A program made the position numbers and the translations under genes. A model generated the notes under the pieces. The model did no database searches, was not told the DNA's origin, and saw only the letters and a program-made list of their open reading frames with translations. Below are positions 22,993-49,200 of a DNA stretch of 64,000 nucleotides, in pieces. Location of the stretch: positions 18,786,001 to 18,850,000 of the forward strand of contig NW_026262604.1 of the NCBI RefSeq assembly GCF_021869535.1, written 5' to 3'. How positions within the stretch are numbered: position 1 is the stretch's first letter; every line of letters begins with the position of its first letter. Source of the DNA: Mytilus californianus (lineage: Eukaryota).

Positions 22993-25290
22993 GTAAACTA
23001 TATACTTCTATAAAACATTTTCATATTTTTAATTCAGATGTCTCTGGTTCATGTTTTATAATCATAAAATATTGCATTTTATTCTTGTTGGATGTATTTT
23101 TCTTCTAATAGATATCAAAAATCCATTGTCGACAGAAGACTGGAGTTATCATCCATCTAAAAAATAATATTCTTTTTATTTGCTTGACTTGACTGACCAA
23201 ACGGGAATCATTTGCGGAACAAAAATAGCCCGCCATTCTAGATCATGCGTGTCACCCTAAATTTTTTGTGGATGCAGACTATAGGTTTTTTTTTCATTTC
23301 TTTCTTCTGTCAATCGATCTGTTAGCCGTCTTTATTCGACTTATTATTTGAAAGCCTCTATCTTTTTTCTCAATTCAACTTCCTTTTATAGAAAAGAAAC
23401 AGTTCGTGGTTATCTTTATTGAAGGCATATGAATAGCTAAGAGTAATCATTTTTCTCTTTCAATAAAACCTGGCCACCTCGATATAGTCAAGAGTGCTGA
23501 AATTGGATTTTGATCAGCAACAATGAAACATTAAGTCTACAACAATAAACAGTCGTCTATAAATATATATACACTATTGAAAACTCTAAATCCCCGCAAT
23601 TCTAAACTAGTCTGAATAATTCAAACTATAAAAAAATAAATCATCGGAATTGCAAAATTTGTAAATATAAAAAAACAATAAGATATGACAAAAGAAATCA
23701 ACTGACAACTTTCCATTCATGAAGCGAGGATGATTTTATTATTTTTAACACGCTTCATTTTAGATTCGTTAAGTGTCCTGATAACGGTACATAAAAACAG
23801 AAATCTTGTACTTCTGTGGTGTAAATCACCTGTTATAAATCAATAAAGTTAGAAACGTTTAACAATTACAAAATGTACCAATGTTAACTGAACTGCTTTT
23901 AAATATTAATCTAATTGAGATTTACTATTTCATCATTATAAAATTGACCCAAAAAAAGACCATACAAATGTATTCCTGAAATCGAGAAAAGACGGAACTC
24001 AATGAGTTAAAAACGGTTCGCGAAACTGATATGTGTTTGATATTGGCATGTTAAATTCATATATTTATTATATTTCCGTTCATAAATTTTGGCAACATTA
24101 GTTTACCAATTTTCAAATATCATAAATGGTTAAGGAGACACAAGTCAAGATAACAAACAAAAACTGAGTGAATCGTATGAAATCCAAAAGGAAAAAGACC
24201 GGCTGGAATGACGAATTAAGTGTCTTCTGCGATGCTGGTATCACCCGCCATAACGATTGGAGAGAAAAACATTTCAGTATTATTCAATTTTGAGGTCTTA
24301 AGGTAATTTTTTTCTTTTATTTATTTTGTTTGCCATGTTCTCTGTTTGTTATCTTTTTTTTTATTCTGTAAACCCCATCTAGTGTCTCATAAAGCAGTAG
24401 AAATCTATATGTGTAAGGGCATGTTGAGTAAGTAGAACACGAACGATGAATCATGCAGTAGATCGAGACTATTGGGAACTAATAAATCAAGTAGGTGAAC
24501 GAATGCAAAGTGGTTTCCCAGCTGGTGGCACCGGTTTAGTATGAATTACTTTCCCTATCAAAATATGGATATGCTTGTCCCTTCTTCCGTTATTATATTG
24601 ATTATTGTTTTATCGCTGTTCTTAATTGATATATAAAATAGATAAATAAATAAATAACTTATATATTTTCAAACACGTAGAAGAATTAGCAACATTTTCT
24701 GTTAATCGTCTAATTGTTTTATTATTTTTAAATATAATTATCCCTTCAAAATTTTCCGATTCTTCACCCTCACTTTATGACAATTCTTCTTAACGCAGGA
24801 TATACACAATGAAGTTAAACACCAAGTCAAGATAGAAACGTATTACTACTACAGCATACTACGCTTTAGGATGGATTTTATCTCATTTCTTTATTTAACT
24901 ACAATTTATCATACTAGTCTTATATTTTTTTGTATTTACCATAAAACATTTTACCACGATTAAATGGTATAAACAAAATGTCTTCGTTTACTGCATAAGT
25001 TGTCAATTGAAGGTAACTGGATATCTACATGTTTACGTAGATTTCCGCCATTGTTTTCTAAATTTACATTAAACAAAAACTTATGATACTATATTTTTTG
25101 AATGCCTACATAAACACACTTTTCCACAGGTAGATCTGCCTCATATTACAAAACGTAAAAAGATACAAACTTGTCTACCCTCCCTTTTTGTTTATAACCA
25201 TAAATCTTTTGTTAAAAGGTGGACAACATTCCTTTTCTTGTATTAATGAAAAGGAAGTATTTTGTTTCAGAAAAAGTGGAAACTGGGAAC

Positions 25291-28200: not shown

Positions 28201-31200
28201 TCTTGGGTGACGACGCATTTGGGTTGAGAATCTTTTTAATGAAGCCATATTCTAGAGTGCTTTGACAAAGTAGTAGAGTCGTGGTTCGATCGAAGTAGAC
28301 TTGTATTGAGATAGTTATGCGATCGGGAAGGTCGTGTTAAGTTCTTTCCAGACGTAGCAAGAGCGTGACAAGATCGTAACTAGAACGTCATACTGTCGTA
28401 GCGGAATCGTAGCAGGATCTTATCAAAATCATACCAAGGTCGTGAAATGAACGTGAAAACTATGAAACATTGAATGGTCAAGTCGACAATATCACGATCT
28501 GACCGCGATCCTTTTTTGTAAATCGTAATGGGATCTTCGTTGACTTGGTCTAGTGTGACGGGGGCTTTATGTAGATTACATATAAAATCAAGACTTTATG
28601 AGGATACAATTTTGTTATATCAAATAACGTAATAGAATATTAGATTAAAATACACAAAGAAAAATATTGCATAATTACATTGTGTTAGCGTAATATGATC
28701 TTCTACAAACTATTGTGTTATATTTGTTTTCTTAAATAAACGATCAAAACTATTAACATGAGGGTATGGAAGGGGTTACAGAATAGAGAATGATGACCAA
28801 AAAATAATGAATAGAGAAAAGTAGGATGTAAATGTATAAAGAATAATTTTGTGGGAAAATAAAAGAATTAAGTAACAATATAATAATACAGATATCAACG
28901 ATGTACAGAATAAGGAAATCATGCATTGATTTAAAGATTAACGTAATAATGAAATCATTTTGTCATTAACATTTGACCGAATAAGAATACGTTTCACAGA
29001 TAACAAAACACCCCCAAACTTTAAAGAAAACAGAAACTAATGATTCCTCTTCTGGACCCTTTTACATGTCACTCAAAAGATTTATTCTACTATTCACCTA
29101 ACTTTTACAATACTAATACTCTGGATACTAAAAAAAAGGTTGCTTCGTAAAAAAAGGCGAATGACAAATTAAATTTCGCCGGAGTGACTTACAAATACTA
29201 GTAGCAATATTCTGTTAATTTTAAAAATGCTTAACAAGTGTATAATGATTAATTATAGGCAGAAATATCATTTAATTTCGGATGACATTCTCTCGTTCTT
29301 TCCTGAATTTTTTTTTACCAACGATATTGTCCGTATGGACTGCGCTGTTTTTTTGTGTTCAAATTTGAGAGTGTAGAGTTTTGTTCGAAGATCTGTTACA
29401 TAATAAACGGAATCGTTCGATCATTCAACCGAAGGCAATCATGTCGTTAAGACGCATCATAGTGATTTAGATTTTTATGCAGGTTTCAAAAAGAATCAGA
29501 CATTGAAGTAGCCTCTTCTTGGAACAATAAAGCGAATCAGTGGATGCAGAACGTTGTTAGGTCCGGTTTTACAAACACAGACGAAATGGTAATATTAATT
29601 AAAAAAAACCTTTCGGAACCAACAAGTTTATTTTAAATAGAAAATCTTACTTTAAGTAACACTGTATTGGTTATTGTGCCGTCTGTGTCACGATTGTGCT
29701 CTTAAGCCCAACTTGGTTCGAAACTAATACATAATATGACGGCATTACACCAATGACAGAAATAAGAACATCTTTCAAAGCAACGCATCCCTTACTTGCA
29801 AGTACGTTGTCGTTGTAGTGAAGCTTTCATTTGTGGGTATTAATTGTACATTTTCGTGATTGGAAATGGACATGGAATCTAATGATGAATGATTATATAC
29901 TCAAAACGAATCGATTACAATTTCGAAATAGAATCTTTCCGGCTAATGTATCTGTCTCAAATATTCATGTTTTTCTATGAGGATTTAAATCTAATGTCCA
30001 ATGGTCCAGCAAGTCAAAATAACGCAGTCAGAGTATTCTCGGACTAATTTTAGTAGTTATCATTTGTCCACGATTAAATACAAAATTAAACAAATTGTTA
30101 GCTACATGTGTAAACTTAATGATTTCTGTGACACACATCAACATAAGATTTCAAATTTATTTAAAACATATTTTGAAACTACAAGAAATAGTACTTTTTA
30201 TTATATATTTGATTATATTTGTATTTTGCAGTCTTATTATAACAGAGAAAGGAAAAATCCAGAGCTAAACCACAGCAATGGCATTCACAACAGACACAAA
30301 AGGGAAACATTAGTTAACAAAAATACGTGTTTTCTCTACTTACAAGCAGACCCAATGTTATTCAATCAAATAAATTCAGCTTATAACGTATGTATTATCT
30401 TTTTGAGGCCTTCGGAATTCTTATACATTTTGTTCTGTTTACGTTTACTCAGGATGGATAAAACACATGCACCGCCTGAGTAAGACAAGTGTATTCTGTA
30501 TTTTATTTAAGAATATTTGATCCATTTGTAAATTTTTACCAGATACTCGGAATACTCTGGTTTTATCCATGAAGTGTCAAAAGAAATTGCACGCTAACCC
30601 CTACTTTTCGTTTTATTATTTTATAACCATATAGTTGTAAAAGTCATGTTTGAAAATCTTATAAATTCTCTGTTTTTATTTCGTAGTCTTTGTTAAATGT
30701 ATGAAAAACTAGAAAATCGTTTCCCGCCAAGCTTCCAATGGTTTATGTCTCTAAACAGTGCATTTTTTTCTGCGTTTTCAGTTCCTTTACCTATGTACTA
30801 TCAATGTATAACAGTCTTTTACAAAATCATATTATTTTGAAACAGAGTAGCGAAAATCCTTCATTGCAAAATCATTCGTAACTCCCGCGAATCATAATTA
30901 AATTAATAATAAATAATAAGTAGATTAAAGTTAAATTTGTATTGACTAAATCTCTTACTTGCATATCCCGTATCCCGTTGAATGTGTTACAATGTTTAAA
31001 CTAAGGAAAAAGTTATCAAAATTAAATAAACAAGACATTTAAAAGAAAATATAGCTATTACCTGTCGTTCTTGTTTATATTATAACAAAGCCCTTTATTG
31101 ACATGAAATAAAAAAAAAAAAAAAAAATAACAAAAAACAAGAAAAAAACAAAAAAATCATACAAACCAACCAAAACATAATTAAAAACATCATTAGTATA

Positions 31201-34200
31201 TTAAATGTTTATCATTTTCAAAATGAAAGGTTAAACATAAAATTCAGAATAGAAATTACAAATATCTTATAGTACTTCCTTAGATGTTTCTCTTTTACTG
31301 TTTAAAATTGAGAATGGAAATGGGGAATGTGTACATACACAAAAGGAATAGGATAACGATATAATCTGTTCATGGAATTATAAAAGATATTGAATATCAT
31401 TTTTTTTAATTTTAGAATGAAGTATTAGCCATGAATGACATTATTGGACTGTTTAATACTCATGTTGATGCCATCAATACTATCTATGCTAATACGGTGT
31501 TTAGAACTTATGATAACAGTATAAGTTACAGTGGAGTAAGATTTAAAATACAAAAGATTAAGGTGAGTGCTATGATATAAACTTTACTGTTGTGTAAAGT
31601 AAAGGACGTATTTTAAGAGATGGTGACGTGGAAGAAAAGTTTGTTGGTGTTGTGGGGTTTGGACTAAATTTGGTACCGAACGTTTTCTTAATTACTTATA
31701 TTCATAACTTCCATTTCTATGAAGCATCGTTCCATCAGCGCCTGCACATGGAGTATATATACCAAGTTGATACGATTTTCGGAGCTTGTGTCTTATCATG
31801 ATCGTTGCTAACCAGGAAGACATTTAACCAAGGGTTCAAAATAATCAAGTTGAGGTCATCCCTTCAAACGTTTTACGGACGCCATTACGAGATTGTTGAC
31901 CGTTATGGAATATCTGTGTAAGAGATTATCATGGATAAGTTGCAATTGTTGTAACTTCTATCCAGTCCTCTTTTCTCGAATTTGACATCACTGAATATTA
32001 CATAACCAATATGATGGAGAAGTAATTATTTACCCTTCTAGAGCATCTGAGTTCATCAATTTTATTATTTTTACAAAATATTTGTTGAATTTGAAGGTAG
32101 ACGTTTTCAACAAATTGTCGGCATTCCTATTGGAACGATACTTACGCCTCTCCTTGCCATCCTCATCTTATTTTCATATGATTCAGAGCTCTTTCGATGA
32201 GTCTTCTGTAGACAAAACGCGCGTCTGACGCATATAAAAAATTTCAATCCTGGTATCTATGATGAGTTTATTATCAGTCATTTTTCAAGTTAAATACAAG
32301 AAAATCAAAGAAGCTAAATCATTTAATTTCACATTCAGAAATATTGATAATGTTCTTTCCATTAATAATCGAAACTGTTCTGATTGGGTTCCATTAATAT
32401 ATATTACAGAATTAAAAATCAAAGAAACAACAGTCACGGCTTTCCCGCCTCATTTTTAGATTTATGTCTCGGACTTGACTTCGAATTTGACATAAGCGGT
32501 CAACTCAGTAGCAGAATCTATGACACACGAGACGATTTTAATTTTAAAATTACAAATTTGTTTCCACCTTAGCAGCAATAGACCAACTTCACCTGTATAT
32601 GGGATGTACATTTCCAAATTCATTCGGTATTCAGAGCTACTCAGACTTTATAAAACGTCATTGGTATCTGACTAATAAGTTGATGGACCAGGGTTTTGTC
32701 ACAGAACGTCTTGTCCATTTTCTTAATATAGTTTCGGAAGATAACAACGAACTTGTTGATATATATTCCGTATCAACTTCACAATTTAGACATGATGGTC
32801 TTGAAGTATAGATTTTTTGTACTGACGTGTATCATCTATATGAATCTATATGAATTATTCTAAATACTAAGGATTTTCTTATCCCAGGAAGATAACCTTA
32901 GCAATATTTGGCACAACTTTTTGGAATTTTGGGTCATCAATGCTCTTCATCTTTGTTTGTCTTTGTTTGCTATTTTGACCTGAGCGTCACTGGTGAGTCT
33001 TGTGTAGACGAAACATGCGTCTGGCGTATTAAATTATAAGCCTGGTACCTTTAATAGCTATTAAATAAAGGCAACAGTAGTATACCGCTGTTCGAAATTC
33101 ATAAATCGATTGAGAAAAAACAAATCCGGGTTACAAACTAAAACTGAGGGAAACACATCAAATATAAGAGGAGAACAACGACACAACAGACACACAACAT
33201 TCAAATGTAACACACACAGAAACGAACTATAATATAACAATGGCCATTTTCCTGACTTAGTACAGGACATTGTAAGGAAAAAATGGTGGGTTGAACCTGG
33301 TTTTGTGGCTAGCCAAACCTCCCGCTTTTATGGCAATGTTAAATATAACATTGAAATGACAACATTACATGACAGGACTACAATACAAATAAATGGGAGA
33401 ACATATAGGACAGAGAAACATACAAATAAAAGCTAACAAAAGGTACCAGGTTTAAAATTTGATACGCAAGACGCGCGTTTCGTCCACACAAGACTAACCA
33501 GTGACGCTCAGATAAAAAAGTATGAAAGCCAACACAAGTACAAAGTTGAAGAGCATTGAGGACCAAAAGTTCCAAAAAGTTGTGCCAAATACGGCTAAGG
33601 TTATATGTCTGGGATAAGAAAATCCTTAGTATTAAGAATAATTCATACTTTTGTAAATAAAGGCAACAGTAGTATACCGCTGTTCGAAACTCATAAATCG
33701 ATAGAGATAAAAACAAATCCGGGTTACAAACTAAAACTGAGGGAAATGGTAAACAGTAAATTTATAAAAATGACTATATAAAAGATATACATGATAACAC
33801 CGAAGTGGTGACTAACTACAGAATAAAAACGGATACATAAATCAACATAAACCAGCACATAAAAATTCACAGCCAAGTTAGCCAAAGCGATCAACGCTAA
33901 AAAATGGTGATGTCACATTTGAATTTCTGAAATTTCCCCAAAATAGGATAGAATAAGGATAGAATTCAAGATTGGTTATAATACTCATATAACATTTATT
34001 AATAACAATGAAATTTACAATACTATTTAATATAAAATGTGGTAGTAATAAGATAATTAATAGTATTATCTAGCTATTTCGGTGTTTCTTCTAAATCAAA
34101 CTGTAAACCAAATATATCGTATAAATTTAGTTGACCCAAACTAAAATCTAATTAACGAACAGGGTGATTAATAATCTTTACCATGACACACGAATACAAC

Positions 34201-37200
34201 AGAAAAAAATAAGATTTACAACTACAAACGATAAGACATTTGACAAAATCTGATGAGAATAACAAATATAACATCAAAACTAAATACATGAGTTTTGGAT
34301 AGAAAGGTACCGTGACACGTCTTATAGCAATGCGAATTCACACTCAGCAAAACAGTCACAATCGGGAATAAGTCACGTTCGGTAATTAAAAGATCAGACG
34401 ATGTAATGTCAAACCACAATCTAACACGTGGTAAAAATGTCCTTAGTTAGTTTGGACAAAGACACATCGTATGGATCGACCAATTCGTGATGGTGTCCGT
34501 AAAATTTACGGAGTGTCATTTTTAATTTGTCCTCCTCATAACTTTGTTGGAGCAGTTTCTGCGTTAGGAGCACACTCCTGTATATGAAGTCCGTATAGCG
34601 TGAACATGCACGAGCATAACGTATCAACTGAGATATGTAAACACCATACGAAGGGGCAGATGGTATGTTACTGCTGAGAAATGGGAAATTGATAATTGGG
34701 AAGTTGAAATCATCCCGTTTATCATAGATTTTCGTTTGAAGTCGTCCATCTGTGTCAATATTGAGGAAAAGATCAAGGTATGAAGCAGTCCTTCTAGTAT
34801 CAGTAGTATCCTTAATTTCAAGTTCACTGGGATATATGAGATGCAAGTATTGGCTGAAATATGGGTTATTCAATGATATGACATCATCAATATATCGGAA
34901 AGTAAAATTAAAGAATTTCGCAAGGTGCTTTTTCTTTTTGTCTTTTAGAAGGTTCTGAATGAATTCTGCTTCATACGAGTACAAAAACAAATCGGCCAGT
35001 AGGGGTGCACAATTAGTACCCATTGGAATACCGACTGTCTGTTGAAATATAAATCATCCAAACTCAACAAATATATTGTCGATCAAAAAGTCCAACATTT
35101 TGATAATATCATCTTCAGTATATTTTCTGGTAGATTCGGTGTGGTTCTTCACAAAATATGAATTATTGTAACCCAAAACAAGCAATTTGTATCCACGATT
35201 CCCATTTTTATCGAAAAAGCTCCGTTCACGAGATGGTGAAGTCGATCTTTCAACTGAGCATGGGGAATAGTAGTGTAAAGCGTAAAAAAATCAAAAGTCT
35301 CTATGTTGCTGCAAAATTGCAAAGATTGTGATCGAAGATTAAGCAGTAGATCTTTCGAATTTTTGAGAATCCACATCTGGTTAACACCACTGGTAGAATA
35401 TATCTCATCACAATATTTTTGAAGCCCATCTTTAACTGTAGAAAGAATAGTAGTCAGTAGTTTAGAAAGATGTTTAGTCGAACATTTTGATGACCCAGCT
35501 ATGTATCGTTCTTTATATGGAGTTTTGTGAAGTTTTGGTATCCAGTATAATGATGGTAAATTTTCTTTGTTTTCTTTGATGTTGATACCAAAAGAAAGAC
35601 GGACAGATTTGTGATTTTGTATTAGCTTGTCGTATTGTTTATTTGTGTGTTTTTCTGTCCTGTATGTTCTTCCGTTTATTTGTATTGTAATCCTGTCATG
35701 TACTGTTGCCATTTTAGTGATATATTTAACATTGCCATAAAAGCGGGAGGTTTGGCTTGCCACAAAACCAGGTTCAACCCACCATTTTTTCTTTCAATGT
35801 CCTGTACCAAGTCAGGAAAATGGCTATTGTTATCTTATAGTTCGTTTCTGTGTGTGTTGCATTTTAGTGTTTCTGTTGTGTCGTTGTTCTCCTCTTATAG
35901 TTGATGTGTTTCCCTCAGTTTTAGTTTGTAACCCGGATTTGTTTTTTCTCAATCGATTTATGAATTTCGAACAGCGGTATACTACTGTTGCCTTTATCTA
36001 TATTACGTGTAATAGTGTTCTTTTTCTTTTTCTTTTTTAATGTTAATAACCTTTACTTTTTCGTCCATTTTTGGTTAATCCTTTTGACGTGGCTGTAACA
36101 AGTCAGGAATATGACAGTTATTTTCCATTCGTTTGATGTGTTTGAGCTTTTGATTTTGTCATTTTATAAGGGACTTTCCGTTTTGAATTTTCATTGGAGT
36201 TCGTTTTTTTAGTTAATTTACTTTAAGTAATAGCGTTGTCAGGTCCTTTTCAAATTACATGTGTTCAATGTATTTTTGGTCTATCCCGCTCCTTTCTTTA
36301 CGTCTATACCTTTCAAATCAAGAGTAAAAATTGATCATGCAATTGCAATAAAACAATTTCACTATTCCAATAGATGTACATATATACGTATAGATAAACC
36401 TATGCACTATCAGTACATTATACCAACATCTTCTTCTGATGTGATTTTAAAGCACTGTTTACACTAAAGTCGAAATCTTCTTTACAGTACAAAGGCGATG
36501 CTAATAACTTTTTTCAATTTAAAAAGACAACGACTGAAAATTCGATAAATAAAATTACTCAATTCAGAACATGGGAAAGATTCGGCTTTGTGTGTCATTA
36601 ACTTATTTTCCGACTATGTCTTATATACAGCTGGAATTAGCAATTTTGTGCGAATATCATTGCTTTCTAACCTAGATAATGACAGACACAACGGAGAAGT
36701 GTTCAACCAGCCAAGCATCTAAGTTTTGCGATCACAATACAGATGTCGTCAACTTTCTTAACCTTCATTCGCAGTCTAATTATTCTGATTTCTGTCTGGC
36801 ATATACCTTCACATACAGAGATTTTTCAAATGACAGCTTAGGTTTCGCATGGATGGGATACTCCGGTCGTAAGTTATTAGCTACTACTTCTTAAATTTTT
36901 TTGAAAATTATTTATAAGTTTATAATGTAGATAGGAATGTCCATTGTGTTTTTAACATGTCTTTTGTAGGGTAGTTATCATGTTTCATTTTAAACATACG
37001 TTAATTTTCCTTTGTTGTTTTTTTATACACAAGTATTTCATAGAAATATAAAGCATAATTGGTTTTTATTGTTATAGTTTCTGATCCGCAAACGTAAAGA
37101 ATTCTAACTTATACCAGACATATCATTCACATCATCAAATTCTAAAAAAAATTCCTAATATCTTAAAAGAACAAATAAAAACTCAACAACTCTATCACTA

Positions 37201-40200
37201 GTGATATACAGGCTGTCAATTTTGGATTTACGAGAGATTTTAACATCCGGATATAACAGTTTCCCATATGAATATATAGGACGTCCTACTATGCACATAA
37301 TTGACATACTAAGTACAATTATCTGCTTGCTCAGAAGTTTAGAACAAGATTGATTAGAATTCGCACCTGAATTTGCTCTTAATCTTGAATGCTGCAAGGA
37401 AACAACGAACACGTGATTGTTTCCCTTAATTAAAGGACCTAAATCTAAAACCTTTACTGCCGGAGCGGTTTTCATTCTTGGGTTTGCCGTCACCAGGAAT
37501 GCATTTAAAAACCAGGATTATAAAATATTTGTGAACTTCATTAAAAATTTCCGCACAAATCAGTTTTGGTTGATGCATTGCAATCATATTTTGCAGAACC
37601 CGCTGGAGGCATATGTGACAAATATAAATCATTCACAGAAAATGGATTATCAGTGATGAAATCACTTAATACCGGTGTTGTTACTCTTCTGAATAACAAC
37701 AATAGTCTAACACAACGGATGTCACAATTATCATTTGCTCATCAAGTAGGACACAGCTTCGGGTCACCAGTAAGTTTGAGATATTTTGAAAAGGGACATT
37801 GTTATGCTACGTATTTAGCTAATGATACGGTGTAGTTTTTTTTTGCGTTTTTTTACCTCCAGTGATAAAACTTATACACGTCTTCCTTTTTGCGTAACAT
37901 CGTACTGAGTATGCATGAAAAAAAATGCTTATAAAGATGAAGAAGAGGAATAAAAGCCCTGTTCACTGATTTTTTTTTGATTTTTTCTATGCATTGTGTG
38001 CGATATTGTCCTATGTACATTTACCCCATATCGTTTTATTTCTTATGAAGGTTGAGCATTGTAAAATCAATTAATCCATCATTCCAAATCTCGAGTGCAT
38101 GCATATATAGTATATTACTCCCAATTGATACAATAGGTTAGCAAGTATGTTCACCTGTTTCTGCGATAAAGGGTTGTTTCGCATACAAAAGCTATTTAAA
38201 AAGATTCAAAGTGGTAGCGACAAGTCATTGCTTACGAATATGCTACGAACGACACTAAGATTAGTTTGAGGCTGGTTTCTCCCTTGCAACACACGGGTAT
38301 CTGAGACACAATTTTTCGGTCAGAGCCAAATAGATAGTACAGGTAATCAGTCTCGACTAGTTTAATCTTGATATAAATCCTGTGAAATTCTATATGCCTT
38401 GGTAAACCAAGCTAATTTTTGTTCAGACTGAATATAATGAAATAAGCTTTGTAATGGCATTACATTATAAAAGATGATAGATTGGTCTCGAATTATAATT
38501 CAAAAGTATTTTTCTTAAATATTCGATTTTGATAGAGAAAAAACTGCGTCTACGGATATCGTCATGTTTCAACTTATTCAAGGTATACATGTATCAAACT
38601 TCCGTTTTGTTGTATGATTCATTTATTTTTTTTTAAACTTGATGATATTTAATTTGATAGCATGATAGTGGAAACCTTTGTACTCCGTATGATAACAGTG
38701 CAGTAGATGCAGAACAAAGGAATTACATTATGAACGAGGAATTTATCAACGGAAATATGCAACACAATGACGAATTCTCTCCATGCAGCAAAGATAATAT
38801 GACGAAAATGTTAGATAAAGTTTTTACAGACAGATTTGGCACAATAAACTGTTTCAAAAGTATGTTTCTTTAAATTAATTTTAGTCTGGAAGGGTCGGGT
38901 TGAAGTTAACAAGGTCTGAAAAGTCTGATCAATAAATTATCAGTCATGTTTAGCTTTTCAGTCAATTTTAAGACTTATCCACTGTGGTAAATTAGTACTG
39001 TTCAGACAATTCGCTTGCAGTCAATTCAGTACTCTTCAGTAGCATTTTAGACAATTCAGTATTCTGTTGATAATTCATGTAAAAAGCAGCTACTTAACAA
39101 TCTGAAAACAGACTGAATAGATCTTAATCTAATCATCTATTGTTCAGTCTTTTAAAAGTTGTTCGGAACGAAATGAACGTTTCAGACCAAAATTGGTTTA
39201 CTAGTTACATTTACATCAGTTTGAAAATAAATGTCATATGTTCAATTTTTTAATCACATTCCAGAAGACAGTGTTACAATAATATTAAGAAGGATGCAGA
39301 CTCATGTTTTTAGAAACATGTAGAAAACACACACGCTTTGTCGGATTCCTATATTGATAGATAGATAGTAGGGATGTCAACTCGAAAAGAGTTAATAATC
39401 GAGTCATTGTTTGATTTACAGAGCACTGACGTGGATAAAATCTACAAAAATAACCCTCAATTATACACATTTTATCCCTGTTGGGCGTTATACCCTAGAT
39501 AAATTATCATCTAGGAATAGAACATAGTCTAGTTTCACAATGACTTATAGATAATAAATAAGTTCTCATTAACTAAATTTATTAATTAGATAAACAAAAA
39601 AATAATCAATAATTTAATTAAAAAATGTTGAATATAATTGATTACAAAGTAAAACCTGATCAAACAATAGTTAAAATTTTTTGGTCGTAAAGAAAAACAC
39701 ATTTTCAAAGGTGTGATGAATAGAAATCACTGATGCGATCTAAAAAAAATTGAATATGATGGAAAGAAGAAGATATTGTTTAAACTGGAAACCGATTAGT
39801 GAAGTATCATGTTGGTATTCGAAACTCTGTACTGCCGAGCGATACCCGAATAATCGAGTACTTTTTGACATCTTTAATAAATAGGTATAAGATTACTAAA
39901 TCCATTGGATGTTGGATGTGTACGGATTGATAATTTAGTCTTGGATGCATGATTTTTTTTATTAGTTGTTAGTGGCTTTGAACTAACTATCAGTAACTGC
40001 AAGTACTCTCAGATATGTACTTAGTGTCTTTTTGATGTTTGGATGTACAAGTACCAGGCCACGTCCACTTGTATTTGTAGTATTTTGTATTTTTATCCAT
40101 CTGATGAGTTAAGCCTCTTTCAACTGATTTTTATAGTTCGTTCTTATGTTGTACTGTTACACCACTGTCCCAGGTTAGGGGGAGGGTTGGGATCCCGCTA

Positions 40201-43200
40201 ACATGTTTAACCCCGCCACATTCTGTATGTATGTGCCTGTCCCAAGTCAACAGCCTGTAATTCAGTGGTTGTCGTTTGTTTATGTGTTACATATTTGTTT
40301 TTCGTTCATTTTTTGTACATAAATTAGGCCGTTAGTTTTCTCGTTTGAATTGTTTTACATTGTCATTTCGGGGCCTTTTATAGCTGACTGTGCGGTATGG
40401 GCTTTGCTCATTGTTGAAGGCCGTACGGTGACCTATAGTTGTTAAATTCTGTGTCATTTGGTCTCTTGTGGAGAGTTGTCTCATTGGCAATCATACCAAA
40501 TCTTCTTTTTTATATGACGTCTTGTACATAACAACCATCCGTATTTAATAAATAGAATAGAGTAAATTAACACCCGGCCTCGTATACATAAGCCAATCAA
40601 AATATTGTATTTTTACGTGAAGTATAATAATGTAAAATATTATTTGTATCATTTGTCTGCCTCTTGTTACAGTGTAAACTGTCTAGAGTGTTAATAAAAG
40701 TTCAAGTTCTAAGATATTGTAAAATAACTTTTGTCACTTTTTGTATTAACGATATACTTTTTCGGGGATGAAAACTATTATTTCATAAGCTCGTATAATG
40801 TTTGATTCCATTCCACTATTGAATACCGTCAAACAATATCAAGACGAAGTACAAAAATGTATTTTTCATAAATAAATTTGCTTGTTGTTGTATTGTTTTT
40901 GATGATGAGTGATGGCTGTTTTAACGTACAGCGGACTTTTTTTCATTGTTTTTATGTTTTTGTTTTTTGTTTTGGTTCCATGGTTATATCACCCAATATA
41001 TTCGTTTCGGACTGAGACAGAGACATATTAAGATAGTTCAAAAGAAAAAAAATGAATGATCCTTTTCCCGACAAGTGGCTCACGTACAAGCCTTTCTATG
41101 TAAACATTGTAGACATCTAAGTACCATTTAGCTACATTAAAATTAAACTTGAACATTCATTTTCAATATGACATTCTGTAGACAACACAATTACCATAAA
41201 AAATTACCATTTTCATGGAAAAAATATATAGTACCGAAATTGAAAGTCTGTCATTCAGAAAGCTCATATCTGGCCTATCATAGTATGTTGACGAAGTACA
41301 AGATTGGGTCAGAATGCCGGGCTAGCACATACCACCCGTTTGCTGTATATTTAAGATACCAAAGACCGCTAATAAAGTTCGATAACTGGTGTCAGACTAA
41401 ATGACCAAGTTAAATAACTAATGCAAGACGAATAATTAGCCAGTTAGAGCTGCGGGATGTAATTAACACATCGCCCGAAACAGAGATACATCATACAATT
41501 ATCTTTGAAGTCGACTGCGTTTCCATTCTTTTTAGATATACAATTCCTTGGTAGGACTCACCAAATCAATGAAAAATTAGTAAAGCGAACGAAAAATCAA
41601 ACACATAAATGAGAAACAGGATAATCGAAAAGTTTTTATTCAAAAAGACTATGGTATTTTTTACCCATGTTATTAACTCGACCATTTTGTAAACTAGAAT
41701 ATACGTTCGAACACGAGCAAACATGCCCGAAGGATTCAAATCAACAAAAAGTAGAAAAAAAACACTGTGTGAGTCAACAGTTTTTACGTCTCCTGTTAAG
41801 CATGGATTGTAAATTCACTCTTTTTTGTAGTCCGTCACAAGGCAGCTGTTGCAATCCAGAAACTTGTGCACTATTTACAAATGGCCAGCTTTGTAGACCA
41901 GCAACAGACTGTGCTGCTGAATCAAACTGTACATATCCTTTATAACGTAACATAAAGTTGGGTACTTGTATGAACTAAAGTTGGATTAAAATTTTGTATA
42001 ACACAATCATGAATTGTAAAAAAGCAGTACACGATCGGTCTAGTTCTATGCTTACATCTGCAAGTATTTAGACAAATTAGCAAATAATGTGTAGGACTGC
42101 TTTTCTAAATTAAAAAGAAATACGTGGTTTTTTGTACACTTTTTTACTGTTTAAACAAATACCCAATATTTATTTTTGTTCGTTTCAATTTTTGATTTTG
42201 TCATGTAAAGGGAAATAATTCCTTTAGTGAAAAATTTATAAAAGGAATGGTAATGAAATTTTCATTTTTTTACTTGTAGCAAGCAAACGAATTCGTTGAC
42301 ACCATTTTTTCTTTTTCTTTTCCTTAAGCATTCTATAAAACCTATCTTCACATATTATGTTCCAAAATTCTATCTCACAGTTTTCTTTTTATTAACAAAG
42401 TAGTTTTTCCTAGGTTATCTTAGCACAATTTGTCAATGTTGCTCAACTTGTAGCTTGATATGTAGCACGGTGGCCGTTACTTTTTATTATATTCTTGAAA
42501 ATAAAAATATGATAAAATTAACATTTTGACAGAGTAAAAGAAAAATTTATCTGAAGAAATATATAGTGATGTTCACCTTAATGGTTCAATGTGCACATAT
42601 CTGATTAAAATTCATTAGAAACACCAAGCTAAATGCGTTTGATTATGAAGTGTAATTTAAGGGCATACGATACAGTTTTGATCCCATAATGAAAAAATGA
42701 TGAAAATTTGCAAATAGGCTATTTTTTACCTGATTAAATCAAATATGTAATAACAAATATACCTGCATGTGCTACTTTTTGAGTAAAATGAGTTCGAAAT
42801 TTCAGATATTTGCTCAAAAATAGGATTTGTGGACGTATTTTTCCTTCCGACAGAAATGCATAACTTTTTTGTTTTAAAAGATAAACACAAGTTGTTTTTT
42901 GTTAAATTATTTGTAATTTCTGTTTTATATAAATATCCTATAAATTTATGAAATTTTTTGTTTAGAAATAACTCAAATTTATCAAATGTTCATGAATGTA
43001 GAAAAAAACGTCATTTTTGCTGTATATTTATCAAATTTAAAAAAAATTGCATTATTGACTTTTTCATGAAAATTGGTACAAATAATCTTCATACATAATC
43101 TACCCGAATGTCATTTTAAAAAAGAGGGGTCCGTGAACTCGTTTTCAAGTTAAATCAGTTTGAATGATAAAAATCAGTCGAAAAATACATCTTTTCCCGA

Positions 43201-46200
43201 TATGTTACAGTTTGACGTCGCCAAAATAACATTTTATGTTAGCAACGTCATTACCTTCCCTGAAACTGTATCGTATGCCCTTAAGATAACAGTTTCTGAA
43301 GAAGTCAGATACGTAGTGAGAAACTTTAAAAGGGGGTTTCACGAGTGTTACAGTGGATAAATTGGTTCATTACTAACTTGCTTCAATCTTCTTTTAACTA
43401 ACAATTTTATTTCAAATTCAACTTTTCGAATACTTGTGCCACTATCTTATCTGATAAAGACGAAACGGACATTAAACCCAATTGGTTTGTTTCTAAACAA
43501 GATTCAAGATTTTCAAGATTTTATTCATAACCATAGACACATACATGTGTACAAGAGGACAATATAATTACAAACTACATATTATATGATACATAGCGAG
43601 ACAGGACAGACAAAAACAAATACATATAAAGTATGTTATAAAAGACAACAGAATGTCTTTTGTTTGTTCATCATACTTTACATTTTTATCAAGTGTTCTT
43701 GATTAAAGAGTGATATTGACAGTACTAGTATTTGAACCTTTTTGCAGCCATGTATTGTTTAGTGAAGTATTACTCAATCCAGTAGTGTGTTTTTGACTGG
43801 AGTATTTTTGTTTATCTTAAGTCACCTTTCATCAACTTCTCCCACCACCAGTAAATTTCTAGTCTTTCTGGAGGGTCAAATTTGCCACTGAACTTACGAT
43901 AGGGTTCAATTCAAACAGTTTTTTCTCGTCTATGTTCAACCAGTTAGAAGCTAGTTTGATTAAATAACAATTGAAATTACCATTCTCATGTTTATATCTT
44001 AATGGATGATTATTGAATATTATGAATTATTCCCATGGCCAATGCAGCGTTCTAACTGACTGAGATTCAATGTTTTCATAAAGCAAACAGGAACACAGTT
44101 ATAGTTTATAGGTAGAAATTTAAATTTTAACCATCAAGGGTTTTAATAATTGACAATCATCCATTTTCCAAAACTAAATATTAGAATTAACAACCCCCCC
44201 CCGTTAACTACAATTGCCTTCCACCATCTATACACTAGACTTAACAGACATAAAATGGACAAATGAACTTGCGTTTGACATTTATAATTTTTTTAATAAT
44301 GAGAGGAACCAAACAAAAGTTATGGTTATAAATTTTAATATAAGAACAGTGACAAAAAAATGAACTACTATTCAAGATACTCGATGTACAAGGTGTTTAC
44401 TTTTATATACAAGTAGATAGTTTGCATTATGATTGATATAAGAGGGTGGTAAAGGGTTATTTTCGTGCAACGTGATCGCCGTTTTTTATTTCACGGTCAA
44501 CGTGTTTTTACTTTTTTATTTGACGTTCAGTCGTGCAAGACAGGTGCCTCGTTCAACGTGTTCTGCTTATTTAATTTTACGTGCATCGTGATTTTCAAAT
44601 GCTTATTTTGCGTCCTCTGTATTTTTCAAATAAAATTCAAACACTTGGCAGGGATCGTCAAGAAAAACATGGATTCAATTCAAAGCGGAAAGTCCTTTGA
44701 TGTTGTTCCTTATCGATTTTGGAGATTCCAAGATATATGTACTGGTTTGGCCTAACACATTGTTCATTAAGTATTAAGTAACTACATCACACATCACACA
44801 TGACATTTTATTGTCTAAACAAATTTGTAACGGGCCATACATATTTATTTTTGTCGTATTCTTTCGATTTGATTCAGTTTGCGATAAGTTAAAAATCGTT
44901 GTACCATATGTTACTATAGTCCTCTGGTATGAATATGTTGATGGATTGCTGTATTGCCATATATGTCTCTAGTTCATGACTGTAATGTTAGAAAACATAA
45001 AAAAATAAAAGGACTAATGAGACCTGCATGGTATGAATTACTAGGGAAAGCTGTAGGATTAGGGATATATTACAATCAACTTGTGCTTCTGTTCGTCAAT
45101 CCAACAAATATTTTCGTTAGATTTTTCTAAGAAACAACTTTACATCGCACTTCATATTAAGTTCAAATCTGATATGTTTTTAACTTGTGAACACTTTTCG
45201 GATCTCCTAGATACATGCTTCCTCATTGCCGATTCTTTGGTAAAATGAAAAGAATGACTTTAAATAGGATCGACATCTTAACAGTGATGAGCTTTAACGT
45301 GTTTGCACTTTCCATCATCTGTCAGTTCAAACTTCCTATTTCTGATACTTTTAACCACGAGTCGTGGTAGCTGGTGGCATGGATAACATGACAACGTGTT
45401 TATTTTTGTTAATAAAGACGATGAAATAGATCAGGAATACACTTTCGTGTCTGCGGGATATTTGCATTTCAAAAGTTAAGAAGATCGTTATATACTTTTT
45501 TAAAAGCCGTAAACCATTCATATTATAAATGTGTATACTAAATCGGGAATATCAAGTAAAACAGAGAGTTTATATATACAAGAAGACAGTGACTCAGTCA
45601 CAAAAGGTTCACATCAAAGTCTTTATTTTTCGTGCAACGTTCGTTCATGACAGAAATTATTTCACATTCAACATGAAATGTCTTATTTCACGTTTTTTCC
45701 GTGCAAGCACCCCCTTTACCACCCTCATATAAATAAATGACACAAGTTTATTGAACTTTATTATTGAATATGATTATCTAAAAAAGAATATCCTACTTTT
45801 TTCATATCTAGTATACTGTAAAGAAAGTCGACAAAACATACATTGGGTTCATACAGCTTTATTAAATTTTTTCCTTAACTGTTTTCAATGGATTCGCAAA
45901 CTGTCCACAGTCTGCTGCTAAGCCTGACTACGTCACGTATTGTAATGACTTTTCCAAAGTCTGTGTAAATGGGGTAAGTACATTGTATACGTATTTATGT
46001 TAAACTGTCTCATGAATAAGCCTTGCAAGGTTGACTCCTCCCCGCCGATACATCTCAGACATTTTGTAAAATAACGTCCTTTTTGTATTATCTATGTGTG
46101 ATTCATGTAGGTTTCGATTCCCAACATCACTGAAGAAACAATAATTGTCGAAATCCGGATATGGTGAGCAAATTTTTGCACCACATGTTTGCGGTATACC

Positions 46201-49200
46201 ATCTTTCCCGCAAGTATATTGTTTTCTGTTTGGTATTAAATTAATAATTAAGGTCCATTTGTTACATCTTGTGATCCGTTTATTTGGCAATCGCCAATGG
46301 CAGTCAGCAGGGTTTGAGAACATCCGTTTTTCGACCTGCTAGTCAAATGCGTTTTGTTAAAATATACTTTTTCACTCTTTTGGTCTTTTGGAAAATGTTG
46401 TTTGCGCTGTATTTAGACCCCTCTACCAAGAAATTTGTTTTGCATGCACACGTATAAAAATAGCGGTTTTTATCCAATGCAATCATAGGTTTGAACGTTA
46501 TTTTCAATTTAGACTTGTTTGATTTATGTTTTATATATACCTGAATTTTGGTAGAAAAGTTCCAAAAAATTCATTTTCCAAAACCCCTAAAAAAATTTGG
46601 AGATAAATGCAATTTATTTTCTTTCGTCACAATTTCAATGGAAGTGTTTGTTCTAATATAAAAATGAGAGGATGTGGCATGAACGATTGCCAATGAGACG
46701 AAAACTATTCACCAATTTGAAAGTTAAATGAATCGGTAGTAAGCAATAAAAGACCAAACATACGTCCTTCAACAACATCAACAATGCGAAAACCCTATAC
46801 CATTTCTTAATCTTTTAAAAGTCAATGCATTTGTATACAACAATATCGGATTTTTTCTTCTTAGTAAGTTTCTGATTGACTTTTCAAATTGCAATGTTCA
46901 GCATTCCCCACAATATTCCTATAAAACAACTTGTTATCTTTTTAAAACTGTTTCTCAAACATATTCAACCCCTTACAGATAGACCATTTCATTGAACTCT
47001 GGTGGATAGTTCTCTCATTGTCAATAATACCATTTCTCCTTATTTCATATTTAATTCAATTTACAGTTATGTACCGGATCAGTTTGTTCAAAGATAGACT
47101 ATGCAGCACAAAACAAAGTAACCTGGATAGAGTGTTTTGTAGAATCACACGGTGATTCGGTTGCTGACAAAGAAAAGCAATGTTTGCTGGGTTGCAGTAA
47201 GAAATAATCAGACCTTATAGTTATATATCAAGTTAGAATTGCACTTGCATATATTTAATAAAGAGCACAAAAAAGGCTTATTGACCAACGCTTTTGCAAT
47301 CGATTTCTCAAATGCCGTTTTGAACATAATGACGTGCATGCTTGTCCAGAAATGAAAATACCATATTAATAAATATGAAGCATCGATTAAAAATTTACAT
47401 TTTTCCCTGGATTATTATGTGTGGTTAAAGTTTATATAGTAATGAGAAAAGAAATGGGGACTGTGTCAAAGAGACAACATCCCAACCAAAGAGCAGAAAA
47501 CAGCCCAAAGCCATCAATGGGTGTTCAACGCAGAAAGAAAATCCGGCCGCGCACCTGGAGGATGGCTTCAGCTGGCCAATACAGAAAAATGTATACTAGT
47601 TCAGCGAAATGGACGCTACACTTAACTCTGAATCATATAAATGAACCAAAATTTAAAACACACAAAAGATTAACAAATGCTAGAGGTTCCTGACTTTGGA
47701 CAGGCGCACACATGCGGCGGATTTATTATTTGAAATATATATATAATGTTTGAACAGGATATCTAGTCTTTCTTTTATAGTTACCATTGTAATCACATTT
47801 TTCCAATTGTCAACTGCGACGTGTATGAGTGGAGATTCACTTGTTGTCGTGTTTCGAGTTGCGAGTTACACAAGTCGAGTTGCGAGTTGCGAAAGTCAAG
47901 TTGCGAGTTACGAAGGTCGAGTTGCGAGTTACGTTTGGTCGAGTTGCGAGTTACGAAAGTGGAGTTGCGAGTTACGAAAGTCGAGTTACGAGTTACGAAA
48001 GTCGAGTTGCGAGTAACAAAAGTCGAGTTGCGAGTTACAAAATTAGATTTGCGTGAAAATGGGGAAAACTATTTCAATTTTTTGGTGTACATCTTTAACA
48101 TTTTTGAATGATGATTAATTGTTTACAGTATTGTTGATGCTTTTTGTTTTTTTGACTTCATCTGAGTCTCATGTAAAAAAAATGGATTGCTTACATAATC
48201 ACTACGCAAAATATGGTTATTTTCTGAAGAAACAGATAGCCTTTTGGAATACAGCGGATGGCTTGTAGTTAAATTATTATCAAATTTCATAGCTAGCACC
48301 GTCATATTAAACTAAAAGGGAGATAGCAAATAAACTATAATAGTACATATATGTAAAAAAAAACCTTCTAGCTGCAGATTTCGTTAAGAGTGGGCTCTTT
48401 GGGGCAGTTACAGAGGCAATATTTGTTAGGGACCCCAAAATTTATTCTTTGGCAGTGACACTCAAAATTGTGGACGTTTAAGTTATATATGTCTACATTG
48501 GCTAGAGGTGAAGGGGGAAGGTTGAGCGCTCATAAAACATGTTTAACCCCACCGCATTTTTGCGTCTGTACTAAGTCAGGAGGCTCTAGCCTTTGTTGGT
48601 TTTGTATAGTTTTTAACTTTGGTTCTTCTATATGTTTCGGAGCATAGAATGGCATCCATTTTCTTTATCTAGTGTACATTGTGTGTCGGGGATGCCGCTG
48701 GGTGTGGGATTTCTCGATGTGTTAAAGACCCATTGGTGGCCTTGGGTTGACTTGTATATTTTGGTTGGGTTGTTGTCTCTTTGACAAATTCCCCGTTTCC
48801 ATTCTTTATTCTATACATGTAGCTGTCAAAGATACTTTTGTAAAAGAGACAAAAGACGCTGTTTTGGAATATGTAACTTCTTTCTAAAAAATGGGTTAAT
48901 CATACCCAAATCAATAAAGTTAATTTAGGCATAACATGCTGACAAATATAACTCTTTTACCTTTTTTTTTACACGAAACTCATTGTGCAGTAGGTGGGAA
49001 ATTGATTAAATAAAGTTTGAATTGTCTGTATAAAACGTCAAAACATTTTTACATCAATATGAAAAAAGTGCAGTTTTAAAGAGTTGTTAGTTATTTGAAA
49101 AGTACAACTTGATGCCATACTTACCCGGGTAAAACTTTTTTCAGGTGCTCTCGTGACAGGCTATGCATGATATTAAGATAAAAAGGAAGCATATTTTTTT

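What the first reader, a model, noticed from the sequence alone, without database searches (positions are those of the whole stretch)
37740..38663. ADAM10-like protein with the catalytic Glu replaced by Gln ([10 protein letters not shown]|H): candidate pseudoprotease
Seen: codons CAT CAA GTA GGA CAC AGC TTC GGG TCA CCA | CAT, so all three zinc-ligand His are kept but HExxH reads HQxxH. Established: the Glu of HExxHxxGxxH is the general base of metzincins, and E-to-Q/A substitutions abolish ADAM proteolysis while leaving the fold intact. Inference: the surrounding exons are open and keep ADAM10-type motifs and cysteines, which fits a zinc-binding, non-catalytic decoy, substrate trap or adhesion protein rather than random decay. 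Known inactive ADAMs are mostly of the testis/neural type; a dead ADAM10/Kuzbanian-type paralog in a mollusc would be unusual.
Basis: partly seen in the sequence, partly recalled or inferred. Interest (0 to 1): 0.75.

Follow-up and report, generated by a model that had tools for sequence, protein, structure and literature searches.

The report
Catalytically dead ADAM10 duplicate in mussels
The California mussel carries a second, fast-evolving copy of the ADAM10 protease gene whose catalytic glutamate became glutamine before Mytilus species split; it also lost its membrane anchor, so it looks like a secreted inactive protease, though this species' copy shows further erosion and no expression was seen.

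Summary
Window 37740-37769 plus 38661-38663 encodes [10 protein letters not shown]|H across a GT-AG intron. A second M. californianus individual also carries CAA.

The locus is RefSeq XP_052085168.1 (Mytilus californianus, "ADAM10-like", 508 aa). It is not a one-off lesion. M. galloprovincialis and M. edulis hold syntenic copies with the same CAA codon, while the canonical Mytilus ADAM10 has GAA.

All three HQ copies also share:
- loss of the prodomain cysteine-switch Cys;
- an 8-residue stalk deletion;
- a TAG stop at the same codon of the transmembrane exon.

The ancestral product was therefore most likely a secreted, catalytically dead ADAM10 ectodomain.

dN/dS is about 0.30-0.34 (bootstrap CI 0.23-0.44), against 0.17 for the canonical gene. 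That excludes long neutral decay but shows relaxed constraint.

The copy in this window is further eroded:
- exon 11, the first half of the disintegrin domain, is absent;
- its amino-acid substitution rate is twice that of its orthologs (p=0.002);
- it carries 12 private changes at near-invariant sites;
- about 10 million RNA reads gave no coverage of exons 8-10.

It is either a shortened pseudoprotease or a very young pseudogene. Interest is moderate.

The parts
25246..25351 (+). exon 1 (start codon, signal peptide)
   Evidence: exact mapping of RefSeq protein P0155; GT donor
25629..25767 (+). exon 2 (prodomain)
   Evidence: AG/GT sites
26403..26512 (+). exon 3 (prodomain)
27498..27681 (+). 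exon 4 (prodomain)
29483..29588 (+). exon 5 (prodomain; the cysteine-switch Cys is replaced or deleted here: ..EVAS--SWNNK.. against canonical ..ASCGNGNRQ..)
   Evidence: this Cys is 99% conserved in HE proteins and is Ser in all three HQ copies
30232..30387 (+). exon 6 (furin site NRHKRE, start of the catalytic domain)
31416..31562 (+). exon 7 (catalytic domain)
36676..36868 (+). exon 8 (catalytic domain)
37597..37769 (+). exon 9, ending in [12 protein letters not shown]; the CAA codon is at 37743-37745
38661..38859 (+). exon 10 (third zinc His, HDSG, Met-turn YIM). The RefSeq model reads on to TAA at 38871-38873
38860..41830 (+). fused intron 10/11. The canonical exon 11 (148 nt, CGNxIVExGEECDCG...) is absent. 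A high-copy repeat lies at about 39750-40550
   Evidence: tblastn and blastn find no exon 11; 41599-41829 is homologous to intron 11 of M. edulis; repeat depth
41698..41830 (+). possible exonised piece of intron 11. It is open in the frame of exon 12 for 69 codons, with a phase-compatible AG at 41696-41697
   Evidence: only 6 codons are open in L001 and L002; empirical chance 1.3%; gives a 747-aa ORF. Its use in RNA is untested
41831..41932 (+). exon 12 (second half of the disintegrin domain, SPSQGSCC...)
41933..45888 (+). U12-type intron with ATATCCTTT at the 5' end, a TTCCTTAAC branch site and a terminal AA
   Evidence: AT-AA in both HQ copies examined (the window and L001; L002 was not examined), AT-AC in the canonical paralog
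45889..45973 (+). exon 13 (Cys-rich)
47067..47196 (+). exon 14 (Cys-rich)
50856..50975 (+). exon 15 (Cys-rich)
51951..52066 (+). exon 16 (ADAM10 Cys-rich PF21299, stalk with the 8-residue deletion)
   Evidence: E=4.7e-9
54926..54970 (+). exon 17 remnant, [14 protein letters not shown] then TAG. The stop lies inside what is the transmembrane helix of canonical ADAM10
   Evidence: same acceptor and same TAG codon position in M. galloprovincialis and M. edulis

Best explanation
The window holds the Mytilus californianus copy of a mussel-specific duplicate of ADAM10. In the common ancestor of M. californianus and the M. edulis group, this duplicate changed in four ways. (1) The general-base Glu of HExxH became Gln by one GAA-to-CAA change. 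(2) The prodomain cysteine-switch Cys was lost. (3) The stalk was shortened by 8 residues. (4) A TAG stop arose in the transmembrane exon. The signal peptide, the furin site, the three zinc-binding His, the Met-turn and most cysteines were kept.

Inferred product: a secreted, furin-processed protein that binds zinc but cannot hydrolyse, that is, a soluble pseudoprotease. It would act by binding, for example by competing with membrane ADAM10 for partners, substrates or foreign ligands, much as the engineered E384A mutant acts as a dominant negative.

Shown: the shared lesions, the phylogeny, purifying selection and a confidently predicted fold. Inferred: secretion, zinc binding, lack of activity and decoy action.

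The californianus copy is further shortened because exon 11 is lost. It would then encode mainly prodomain plus dead catalytic domain, or a 747-aa protein if an intronic acceptor at 41698 is used.
For: Identity: P0155 (XP_052085168.1) maps 100% onto ten window exons. Pfam Reprolysin_2 scores E=1.7e-26. The AlphaFold model has pLDDT 86.6 and matches the human ADAM10 ectodomain at 36-38% identity and rmsd 2.4-2.5 A, and also zymogen ADAM17.

Shared ancestry: HQ copies in M. galloprovincialis (P0001) and M. edulis (P0151) all use CAA, while the canonical copies use GAA. The M. edulis copy lies next to a Rost gene, as in the window. The HQ clade has 100% support and is sister to the canonical Mytilus clade. 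The TAG stop, the conserved acceptor and the loss of the Cys switch are shared by all three.

Selection: dN/dS is 0.30-0.34 with CI 0.23-0.44, and no bootstrap replicate reached 1 for the whole gene (Biopython NG86 and ML agree). All 15 retained exons have intact splice sites and no stop in 2013 nt. Under neutrality, 0.04 substitutions per site would already leave only a 1.4% chance of no stop.

E384A ADAM10 is catalytically inactive and dominant-negative in vivo (PMC2647556).
Against: No expression was seen: zero depth on exons 8-10 in about 10 million RNA reads of one M. californianus data set, of which only about 6% was read.

Exon 11 is missing, so a direct exon 10 to exon 12 splice shifts the frame. 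The RefSeq model simply runs into intron 10.

The M. californianus lineage has twice as many private amino-acid changes as its orthologs (59 against 30, p=0.002). These include invariant Gly residues (G369D, G457R) and the S1' wall.

M. edulis has independently lost exon 13, so the C-terminal domains may be decaying in two species.

dN/dS is twice that of the canonical gene. Cleft residues are not conserved, which fits a substrate trap poorly.
Confidence: 0.55

Rival explanations
1. The copy in this window is now a non-functional relic. The dead paralog was functional for most of its history, but in M. californianus it has recently become a pseudogene, through loss of exon 11 and transcriptional silence, and has not yet had time to collect stops.
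For: Exon 11 is absent and replaced by repeat-bearing intron. There was no RNA coverage. The amino-acid rate is doubled and there are 12 private changes at sites conserved in at least 93% of ADAM10 proteins. Of the exon differences listed between individuals or sister species, 6 are nonsynonymous and 3 synonymous (the list is incomplete). M. edulis lost another exon independently.
Against: There is no stop or frameshift in 2013 nt of retained exons, and all splice sites are intact, including the U12 signals. A neutral phase must therefore be shorter than about 0.03 substitutions per site. Exons downstream of the gap still give omega of 0.32-0.46. The 69-codon open frame upstream of exon 12 is unexpected for plain intron (1.3%).
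Confidence: 0.35
2. The protein is still a working protease. Gln, or a neighbouring residue, supports residual hydrolysis, or the site has shifted to another chemistry.
For: All three zinc ligands, the Met-turn and the furin site are retained. The predicted fold is intact.
Against: The Glu is invariant in 90 of 90 HE ADAM10 proteins. E384A abolishes ADAM10 activity (PMC2647556). The simultaneous loss of the cysteine switch suggests that latency control is no longer needed. No compensating acidic residue is evident in the motif.
Confidence: 0.03
3. The CAA is a sequencing or assembly error, or a rare private allele of the reference animal.
For: None found.
Against: An independent DNA run carries the same sequence. 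Orthologs in two other species' assemblies have the same codon.
Confidence: 0.01

Closest known systems
Canonical ADAM10 / Kuzbanian (here the Mytilus ADAM10-like genes XP_052097566.1 and relatives)
   Same: The exon-intron plan is the same 17-18 exons with the same phases, including the U12 intron. The signal peptide, prodomain, furin site, Reprolysin_2 catalytic fold, three zinc His, Met-turn, disintegrin and ADAM10 Cys-rich domain are shared. It is the sister clade in the tree.
   Different: HQxxH replaces HExxH. There is no cysteine-switch Cys, an 8-residue stalk deletion and a stop inside the transmembrane helix, so no membrane anchor or cytoplasmic tail. Protein evolution is about 2-4 times faster. 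The U12 intron is AT-AA instead of AT-AC. In this genome exon 11 is missing.
Engineered catalytically inactive ADAM10 E384A (dominant-negative)
   Same: It is a single substitution of the same general-base Glu with the zinc ligands kept, and it acts by competition, not catalysis (PMC2647556).
   Different: E384A is membrane-anchored and otherwise wild type. The mussel protein is naturally evolved, predicted to be soluble and diverged around the cleft.
Naturally non-proteolytic vertebrate ADAMs (ADAM2, 7, 11, 18, 22, 23, 29, 32); from my own knowledge, not tested here
   Same: They are members of the ADAM family retained without a working active site and used as binding or adhesion proteins.
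   Different: They belong to other ADAM subfamilies, are membrane proteins and mostly lack the zinc motif altogether. The mussel gene is an ADAM10-subfamily duplicate that keeps the zinc ligands and has lost the anchor.
Other HQ-bearing ADAM10-like proteins in public data (P0279 and P0280, intronless genes in ENA eukaryotic assemblies; P0132, JGI; P0039 and P0075, Logan)
   Same: They show the same E-to-Q change in an ADAM10-type motif.
   Different: They are of independent origin, with long separate branches in the tree. P0279 and P0280 are single-exon, retrocopy-like genes. Their organisms are unknown.

Membership tests
ADAM10/Kuzbanian subfamily of M12B metalloproteases | Reprolysin-type catalytic domain closest to ADAM10 | tested here: met
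   Pfam PF13574 E=1.7e-26. PDB phmmer: ADAM10 4.5e-10 against ADAM17 0.56. Foldseek: 6be6 and 8esv at 36-38% identity, rmsd 2.4-2.5 A.
ADAM10/Kuzbanian subfamily of M12B metalloproteases | HExxHxxGxxH with the catalytic Glu | tested here: not met
   The motif reads [11 protein letters not shown]. The Glu is 100% conserved in 90 HE proteins.
ADAM10/Kuzbanian subfamily of M12B metalloproteases | Three zinc-ligand His and the Met-turn | tested here: met
   H429, H433, H439 and I461-M462 fall in invariant columns of alignment A1.
ADAM10/Kuzbanian subfamily of M12B metalloproteases | Prodomain with cysteine-switch Cys and a furin site | tested here: not met
   The furin site RHKR is kept, but the Cys (99% conserved) is Ser in all three HQ copies. 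That this Cys is the switch rests on my recollection of human ADAM10 C173.
ADAM10/Kuzbanian subfamily of M12B metalloproteases | Complete disintegrin domain | tested here: not met
   Exon 11 (CGN..EECDCG.., 7 Cys) is absent from the window. It is present in M. galloprovincialis and M. edulis.
ADAM10/Kuzbanian subfamily of M12B metalloproteases | ADAM10-specific Cys-rich domain (PF21299) | tested here: met
   E=4.7e-9 on 51923-52075.
ADAM10/Kuzbanian subfamily of M12B metalloproteases | Transmembrane helix and cytoplasmic tail | tested here: not met
   A TAG stop follows [14 protein letters not shown], at the same codon in three species.
ADAM10/Kuzbanian subfamily of M12B metalloproteases | Placement inside the ADAM10 clade, with shared gene structure | tested here: met
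   It is sister to canonical Mytilus ADAM10 with 97-100% SH-aLRT. Exon boundaries and phases are identical.
Pseudoenzyme (retained catalytically dead paralog) | Loss of an essential catalytic residue | tested here: met
   E-to-Q.
Pseudoenzyme (retained catalytically dead paralog) | Purifying selection after the loss | tested here: met
   omega is 0.30-0.34, CI 0.23-0.44, below 1 in every domain.
Pseudoenzyme (retained catalytically dead paralog) | Expressed as RNA and protein | tested here: inconclusive
   Zero depth on exons 8-10 in about 10 million reads, about 6% of one RNA data set. Other tissues were not examined.
Pseudoenzyme (retained catalytically dead paralog) | Demonstrated lack of activity with retained binding | not testable with these tools
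   This needs the recombinant protein.
Ordinary (unitary or duplicated) pseudogene | Stops or frameshifts in the coding exons | tested here: inconclusive
   There are none in the 15 retained exons. Loss of exon 11 shifts the frame unless the 41698 acceptor or the intron-10 stop is used.
Ordinary (unitary or duplicated) pseudogene | dN/dS near 1 | tested here: not met
   The M. californianus branch is faster, roughly 0.44 by my rough partition of the values, but still below 1.

The most novel reading that the evidence does not exclude
Mytilus keeps a secreted, zinc-bound but inactive ADAM10 ectodomain as an extracellular decoy. The decoy would either damp shedding by membrane ADAM10 (a natural soluble dominant negative) or soak up foreign ligands that target ADAM10. 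The unusually deep divergence of the locus between M. galloprovincialis and M. edulis (dS 0.27 against 0.057 for the canonical gene; 83% against 94% locus identity) would then reflect long-lived alleles or presence/absence haplotypes under balancing or arms-race selection. In M. californianus, the loss of exon 11 would be repaired by exonisation of 133 nt of intron 11.
Probability: 0.12. Interest if true: 0.75.

Novelty: new variant of a known kind. Interest (0 to 1): 0.45.

Why it matters
Non-proteolytic ADAMs are well known, but they belong to other subfamilies and are membrane proteins. I know of no natural counterpart of the laboratory E384A mutant in the ADAM10/Kuzbanian lineage, and the ADAM10+Mytilus search of the held paper library returned nothing on Mytilus ADAM10 paralogs.

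This gene would be such a counterpart: soluble, conserved across at least three mussel species, and evolving fast. That offers a natural experiment on what an ADAM10 ectodomain does without catalysis, and a candidate extracellular regulator or decoy in bivalve development or immunity.

It also shows how gene predictors truncate such genes. All three RefSeq models break at the missing exon or at the U12 intron, so the shared stop in the transmembrane exon and the dead site are not visible in current annotation.

If the M. californianus copy proves silent, the finding reduces to a well-dated example of stepwise decay of a duplicate.

Tried and rejected
1. I looked for exon 11 with tblastn (word size 2, E up to 1000) and blastn (word size 7) in 38860-41830 and across the whole window, and found nothing credible. 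A weak protein similarity of the ORF 41625-41829 to exon 11 (E=0.55) turned out to be chance, because that DNA is homologous to intron 11 of M. edulis.

2. The RNA 'holders' X15 and X16 (share 0.17-0.18) are probably explained by the high-copy repeat at 37750-38150 in intron 9, so I did not count them as expression.

4. A word search with P0001 and with P0155 found no further HQ orthologs (M. coruscus, M. trossulus) of 280-1025 aa. Absence of transcript-derived HQ proteins is uninformative, because the canonical Mytilus cluster also has only NCBI members.

5. Two scripts timed out, one on Biopython bootstrapping and one on a large MAFFT run. I replaced them with my own NG86 code and a faster alignment.

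6. A literature search on ADAM7 and HQ gave nothing usable. Searches for ADAM10+Mytilus and for pseudoprotease/ADAM/catalytic glutamate found nothing on Mytilus ADAM10 paralogs.

7. I considered a GPI-anchor reading of the short hydrophobic C-terminus. There is no tool for it, and the tail is short and contains Lys, so I leave it as a low-probability idea.

8. The full spliced 747-aa model could not be handed to the search or fold tools because it has no reference. The 508-aa RefSeq protein was folded instead.
Full report
OBSERVATION

The window reads CAT CAA GTA GGA CAC AGC TTC GGG TCA CCA at 37740-37769. A gtaagt donor follows, and after an AG acceptor the sequence continues CAT GAT AGT GGA from 38661. 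The 30-mer is unique in the window. The two exons translate to ...[14 protein letters not shown] | [10 protein letters not shown]...

phmmer against PDB aligns the first exon to human ADAM10 (E=4.5e-10; FAHEVGHNFGSP), whereas ADAM17 scores only 0.56. Pfam finds Reprolysin_2 on three exons and the ADAM10-specific Cys-rich domain further downstream.

An independent M. californianus DNA run (X4) has one contig over 36550-37963. All 15 of its differences are listed and none lies in the CAA codon.

WHAT THE LOCUS IS

A search of 1.84 billion representatives with the 58-residue exon gave 150 ADAM10-like hits. Of these, 141 carry HE and 6 carry HQ. The best hit (P0001, Mytilus galloprovincialis) reads [11 protein letters not shown]. 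Word searches added P0151 (M. edulis, HQIGHNFGSPH) and P0155 (M. californianus XP_052085168.1, 508 aa).

P0155 maps at 100% identity onto ten window exons, from 25246 to 38870. The window is therefore this RefSeq locus in the California mussel. That model ends by reading from exon 10 into the intron (SMFL, then a stop).

Using the canonical Mytilus ADAM10 as a guide, I found six further in-frame exons: 41831-41932, 45889-45973, 47067-47196, 50856-50975, 51951-52066 and 54926-54970. All have GT-AG sites except one U12-type AT-AA intron. The exon plan and phases match the 18-exon canonical gene.

SHARED, ANCESTRAL CHANGES

All three HQ genes use CAA where the canonical genes of the same species use GAA. 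The M. edulis copy lies beside a Rost gene, as in the window.

In a maximum-likelihood tree the three HQ genes form a clade with 100% support. That clade is sister to the canonical Mytilus clade (97%), with another mytilid-like sequence outside both. The duplication therefore arose within Mytilidae and predates the split of M. californianus from the M. edulis group.

The HQ clade also shares the following:
- loss of a Cys that is 99% conserved in the prodomain, which I take to be the cysteine switch (from memory of human C173);
- T-to-S just before the first His;
- an 8-residue stalk deletion;
- a TAG stop at the same codon of exon 17, behind a conserved acceptor, so the proteins end ...KHW(W/L)IVLL(L/I)AKGL(V/I/F) in the middle of what is the transmembrane helix of ADAM10.

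The signal peptide, furin site (RHKR), three zinc His, Met-turn and most cysteines are kept. An AlphaFold model of P0155 is confident (pLDDT 86.6, pTM 0.86). It superposes on zymogen ADAM17 and on the human ADAM10 catalytic domain at 36-38% identity and rmsd 2.4-2.5 A.

SELECTION

Codon alignments of the HQ trio and the canonical trio gave these values (Biopython NG86 and ML agree).

| Gene | Species pair | dN | dS | omega | Bootstrap CI |
|---|---|---|---|---|---|
| HQ | M. californianus - M. galloprovincialis | 0.158 | 0.467 | 0.34 | 0.26-0.43 |
| HQ | M. californianus - M. edulis | 0.155 | 0.452 | 0.34 | 0.27-0.44 |
| HQ | M. galloprovincialis - M. edulis | 0.081 | 0.269 | 0.30 | 0.23-0.40 |
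| Canonical | M. californianus - M. edulis | 0.066 | 0.39 | 0.17 | 0.13-0.22 |

Omega is below 1 in the prodomain (0.37-0.40), the catalytic domain (0.26-0.31) and the disintegrin/Cys-rich exons (0.32-0.46).

The 2013 nt of retained exons contain no stop. Since 5.3% of single substitutions would create a stop, a neutral phase of 0.04 substitutions per site would leave only a 1.4% chance of this. The gene was selected as a protein for most of its history, under roughly twofold relaxed constraint.

EROSION IN THIS GENOME

Exon 11 is 148 nt and encodes CGNxIVExGEECDCG... with seven cysteines. It is present in M. galloprovincialis and M. edulis but cannot be found between exons 10 and 12 of the window, or anywhere else in it. 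The DNA just upstream of exon 12 is homologous to intron 11 of M. edulis. Contigs of the second individual are collinear with the window on both sides of a high-copy repeat at about 39750-40550.

Splicing exon 10 directly to exon 12 shifts the frame and stops after 60 foreign residues.

In M. californianus alone, the last 69 codons of intron 11 are open in the frame of exon 12, against 6 codons in the two other species. A phase-compatible AG at 41696-41697 would restore a 747-aa ORF. The empirical chance of such an open stretch in this gene's introns is 1.3%. This is suggestive of exonisation, but it is untested.

Tajima's relative-rate test shows 59 private amino-acid changes in the M. californianus copy against 30 in M. 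galloprovincialis (p=0.002), and 54 against 27 in M. edulis. Twelve of these private changes hit columns that are at least 93% conserved across ADAM10 proteins. They include G369D, G457R (next to the Met-turn) and SAT to EFI on the S1' side.

M. edulis has independently lost exon 13 through a deletion of about 1.7 kb.

EXPRESSION

The one RNA data set with raw reads (X21) was about 6% read, or about 10 million reads. It gave zero depth on exons 8, 9 and 10, and about two reads near exon 12. Only repeats were covered. That bounds expression in that sample to a few TPM at most and says nothing about other tissues.

The small 'RNA' shares are probably due to the intronic repeat at 37750-38150.

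INTERPRETATION

Best reading (0.55): an ancient, mussel-specific, secreted and catalytically dead ADAM10 paralog, retained by selection. It acts by binding rather than cleavage. The engineered E384A mutant shows that such a protein can be dominant-negative (PMC2647556). The copy in this window is shortened.

Main rival (0.35): in M. californianus the gene has very recently died.

Residual catalysis (0.03) and artefact (0.01) are unlikely.

The diverged cleft argues against a faithful substrate trap. Retention of the furin site and the prodomain fold suggests that processing, or the prodomain itself, still matters.

COMPARISON AND NOVELTY

It works like a non-proteolytic ADAM or a natural E384A. 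It is not a full member of the ADAM10 family by the defining features tested: there is no catalytic Glu, no Cys switch, no transmembrane helix or tail, and here an incomplete disintegrin domain.

E-to-Q ADAM10-like proteins also occur elsewhere (P0279 and P0280 are intronless genes, and P0132), so the substitution itself recurs.

Searches of the held paper library for ADAM10+Mytilus and for pseudoprotease/ADAM/catalytic glutamate returned nothing on Mytilus ADAM10 paralogs. The gene is annotated only as 'ADAM10-like'.

I class it as a new variant of a known kind, of moderate interest.

EARLIER NOTES OF THIS SCAN

The AT-AA U12 intron (s1-279587) is confirmed here, and both HQ copies examined (this window and M. 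galloprovincialis) have AT-AA while the canonical gene has AT-AC. Notes on a transposon that captured four ADAM10 exons elsewhere in this genome (s1-302488, s1-302839) were not tested.

Noticed in passing
window 41933-45888: U12-type intron with 5' ATATCCTTT, a TTCCTTAAC branch site and terminal AA. The M. galloprovincialis HQ copy also ends in AA, although its 5' site is weakened to ATATCT. The canonical ADAM10 paralogs have AT-AC at the same intron.
   Followed up: partly
window 41625-41830: A 69-codon stop-free stretch of former intron 11 lies in the frame of exon 12. It is found only in M. californianus, and a phase-compatible AG lies at 41696-41697. This may be exonisation compensating for the lost exon 11.
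   Followed up: partly
L001 against L002 (HQ loci of M. galloprovincialis and M. edulis): The two loci are only about 83% identical over about 18 kb including introns, rising to 90-94% in the 3' third. The canonical loci are about 94% identical, and mostly 96-99%. dS is 0.27 against 0.057. This points to deep haplotypes, paralogy or a recombinant history at the HQ locus.
   Followed up: partly
L002 26869-26994: The M. edulis HQ copy lacks exon 13 (85 nt) through a deletion of about 1.7 kb relative to M. galloprovincialis. Joining exon 12 to exon 14 would shift the frame.
   Followed up: yes
window 5761-9448 and 17021-21688 (+): Two tandem Rost (protein rolling stone, PF21534) gene copies lie upstream of the ADAM10-like gene. 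A Rost gene also lies upstream of the M. edulis HQ copy.
   Followed up: partly
window 12523-13674 (+): Adjacent ORFs with DUF3504 (E=1.1e-10) and a weak, sub-threshold tyrosine-recombinase (Phage_integrase) match (E=9e-5, 22.7 bits against a cutoff of 27.1) lie between the two Rost copies. They look like a Crypton-type or related mobile element.
   Followed up: no
window 34424-35793 (-): Two long ORFs (210 and 214 aa) with reverse-transcriptase-like motifs lie inside intron 7. They gave no Pfam hit at E<=0.001.
   Followed up: no
window 39750-40550, also about 22194-22555 and 48459-48644: An extremely high-copy repeat, with summed contig depth of 1e5 to 4e6 in DNA runs and also covered by RNA reads, sits where exon 11 would be expected.
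   Followed up: no
window about 55000-56150 and about 58040-59130: Near-identical ORF series recur about 3 kb apart, for example 55168-55287 and 58210-58329. This indicates a direct repeat of about 1 kb whose copies lie about 3 kb apart, downstream of the gene.
   Followed up: no
L006 and L007 (ENA assemblies ERZ25069870 and ERZ25069866): Intronless ADAM10-like genes of 611 and 660 aa with HQIGHSLGA(K/L)H lie on 2-3 Mb eukaryotic contigs of unknown organism. This is an independent case of E-to-Q, and the genes look like retrocopies.
   Followed up: partly
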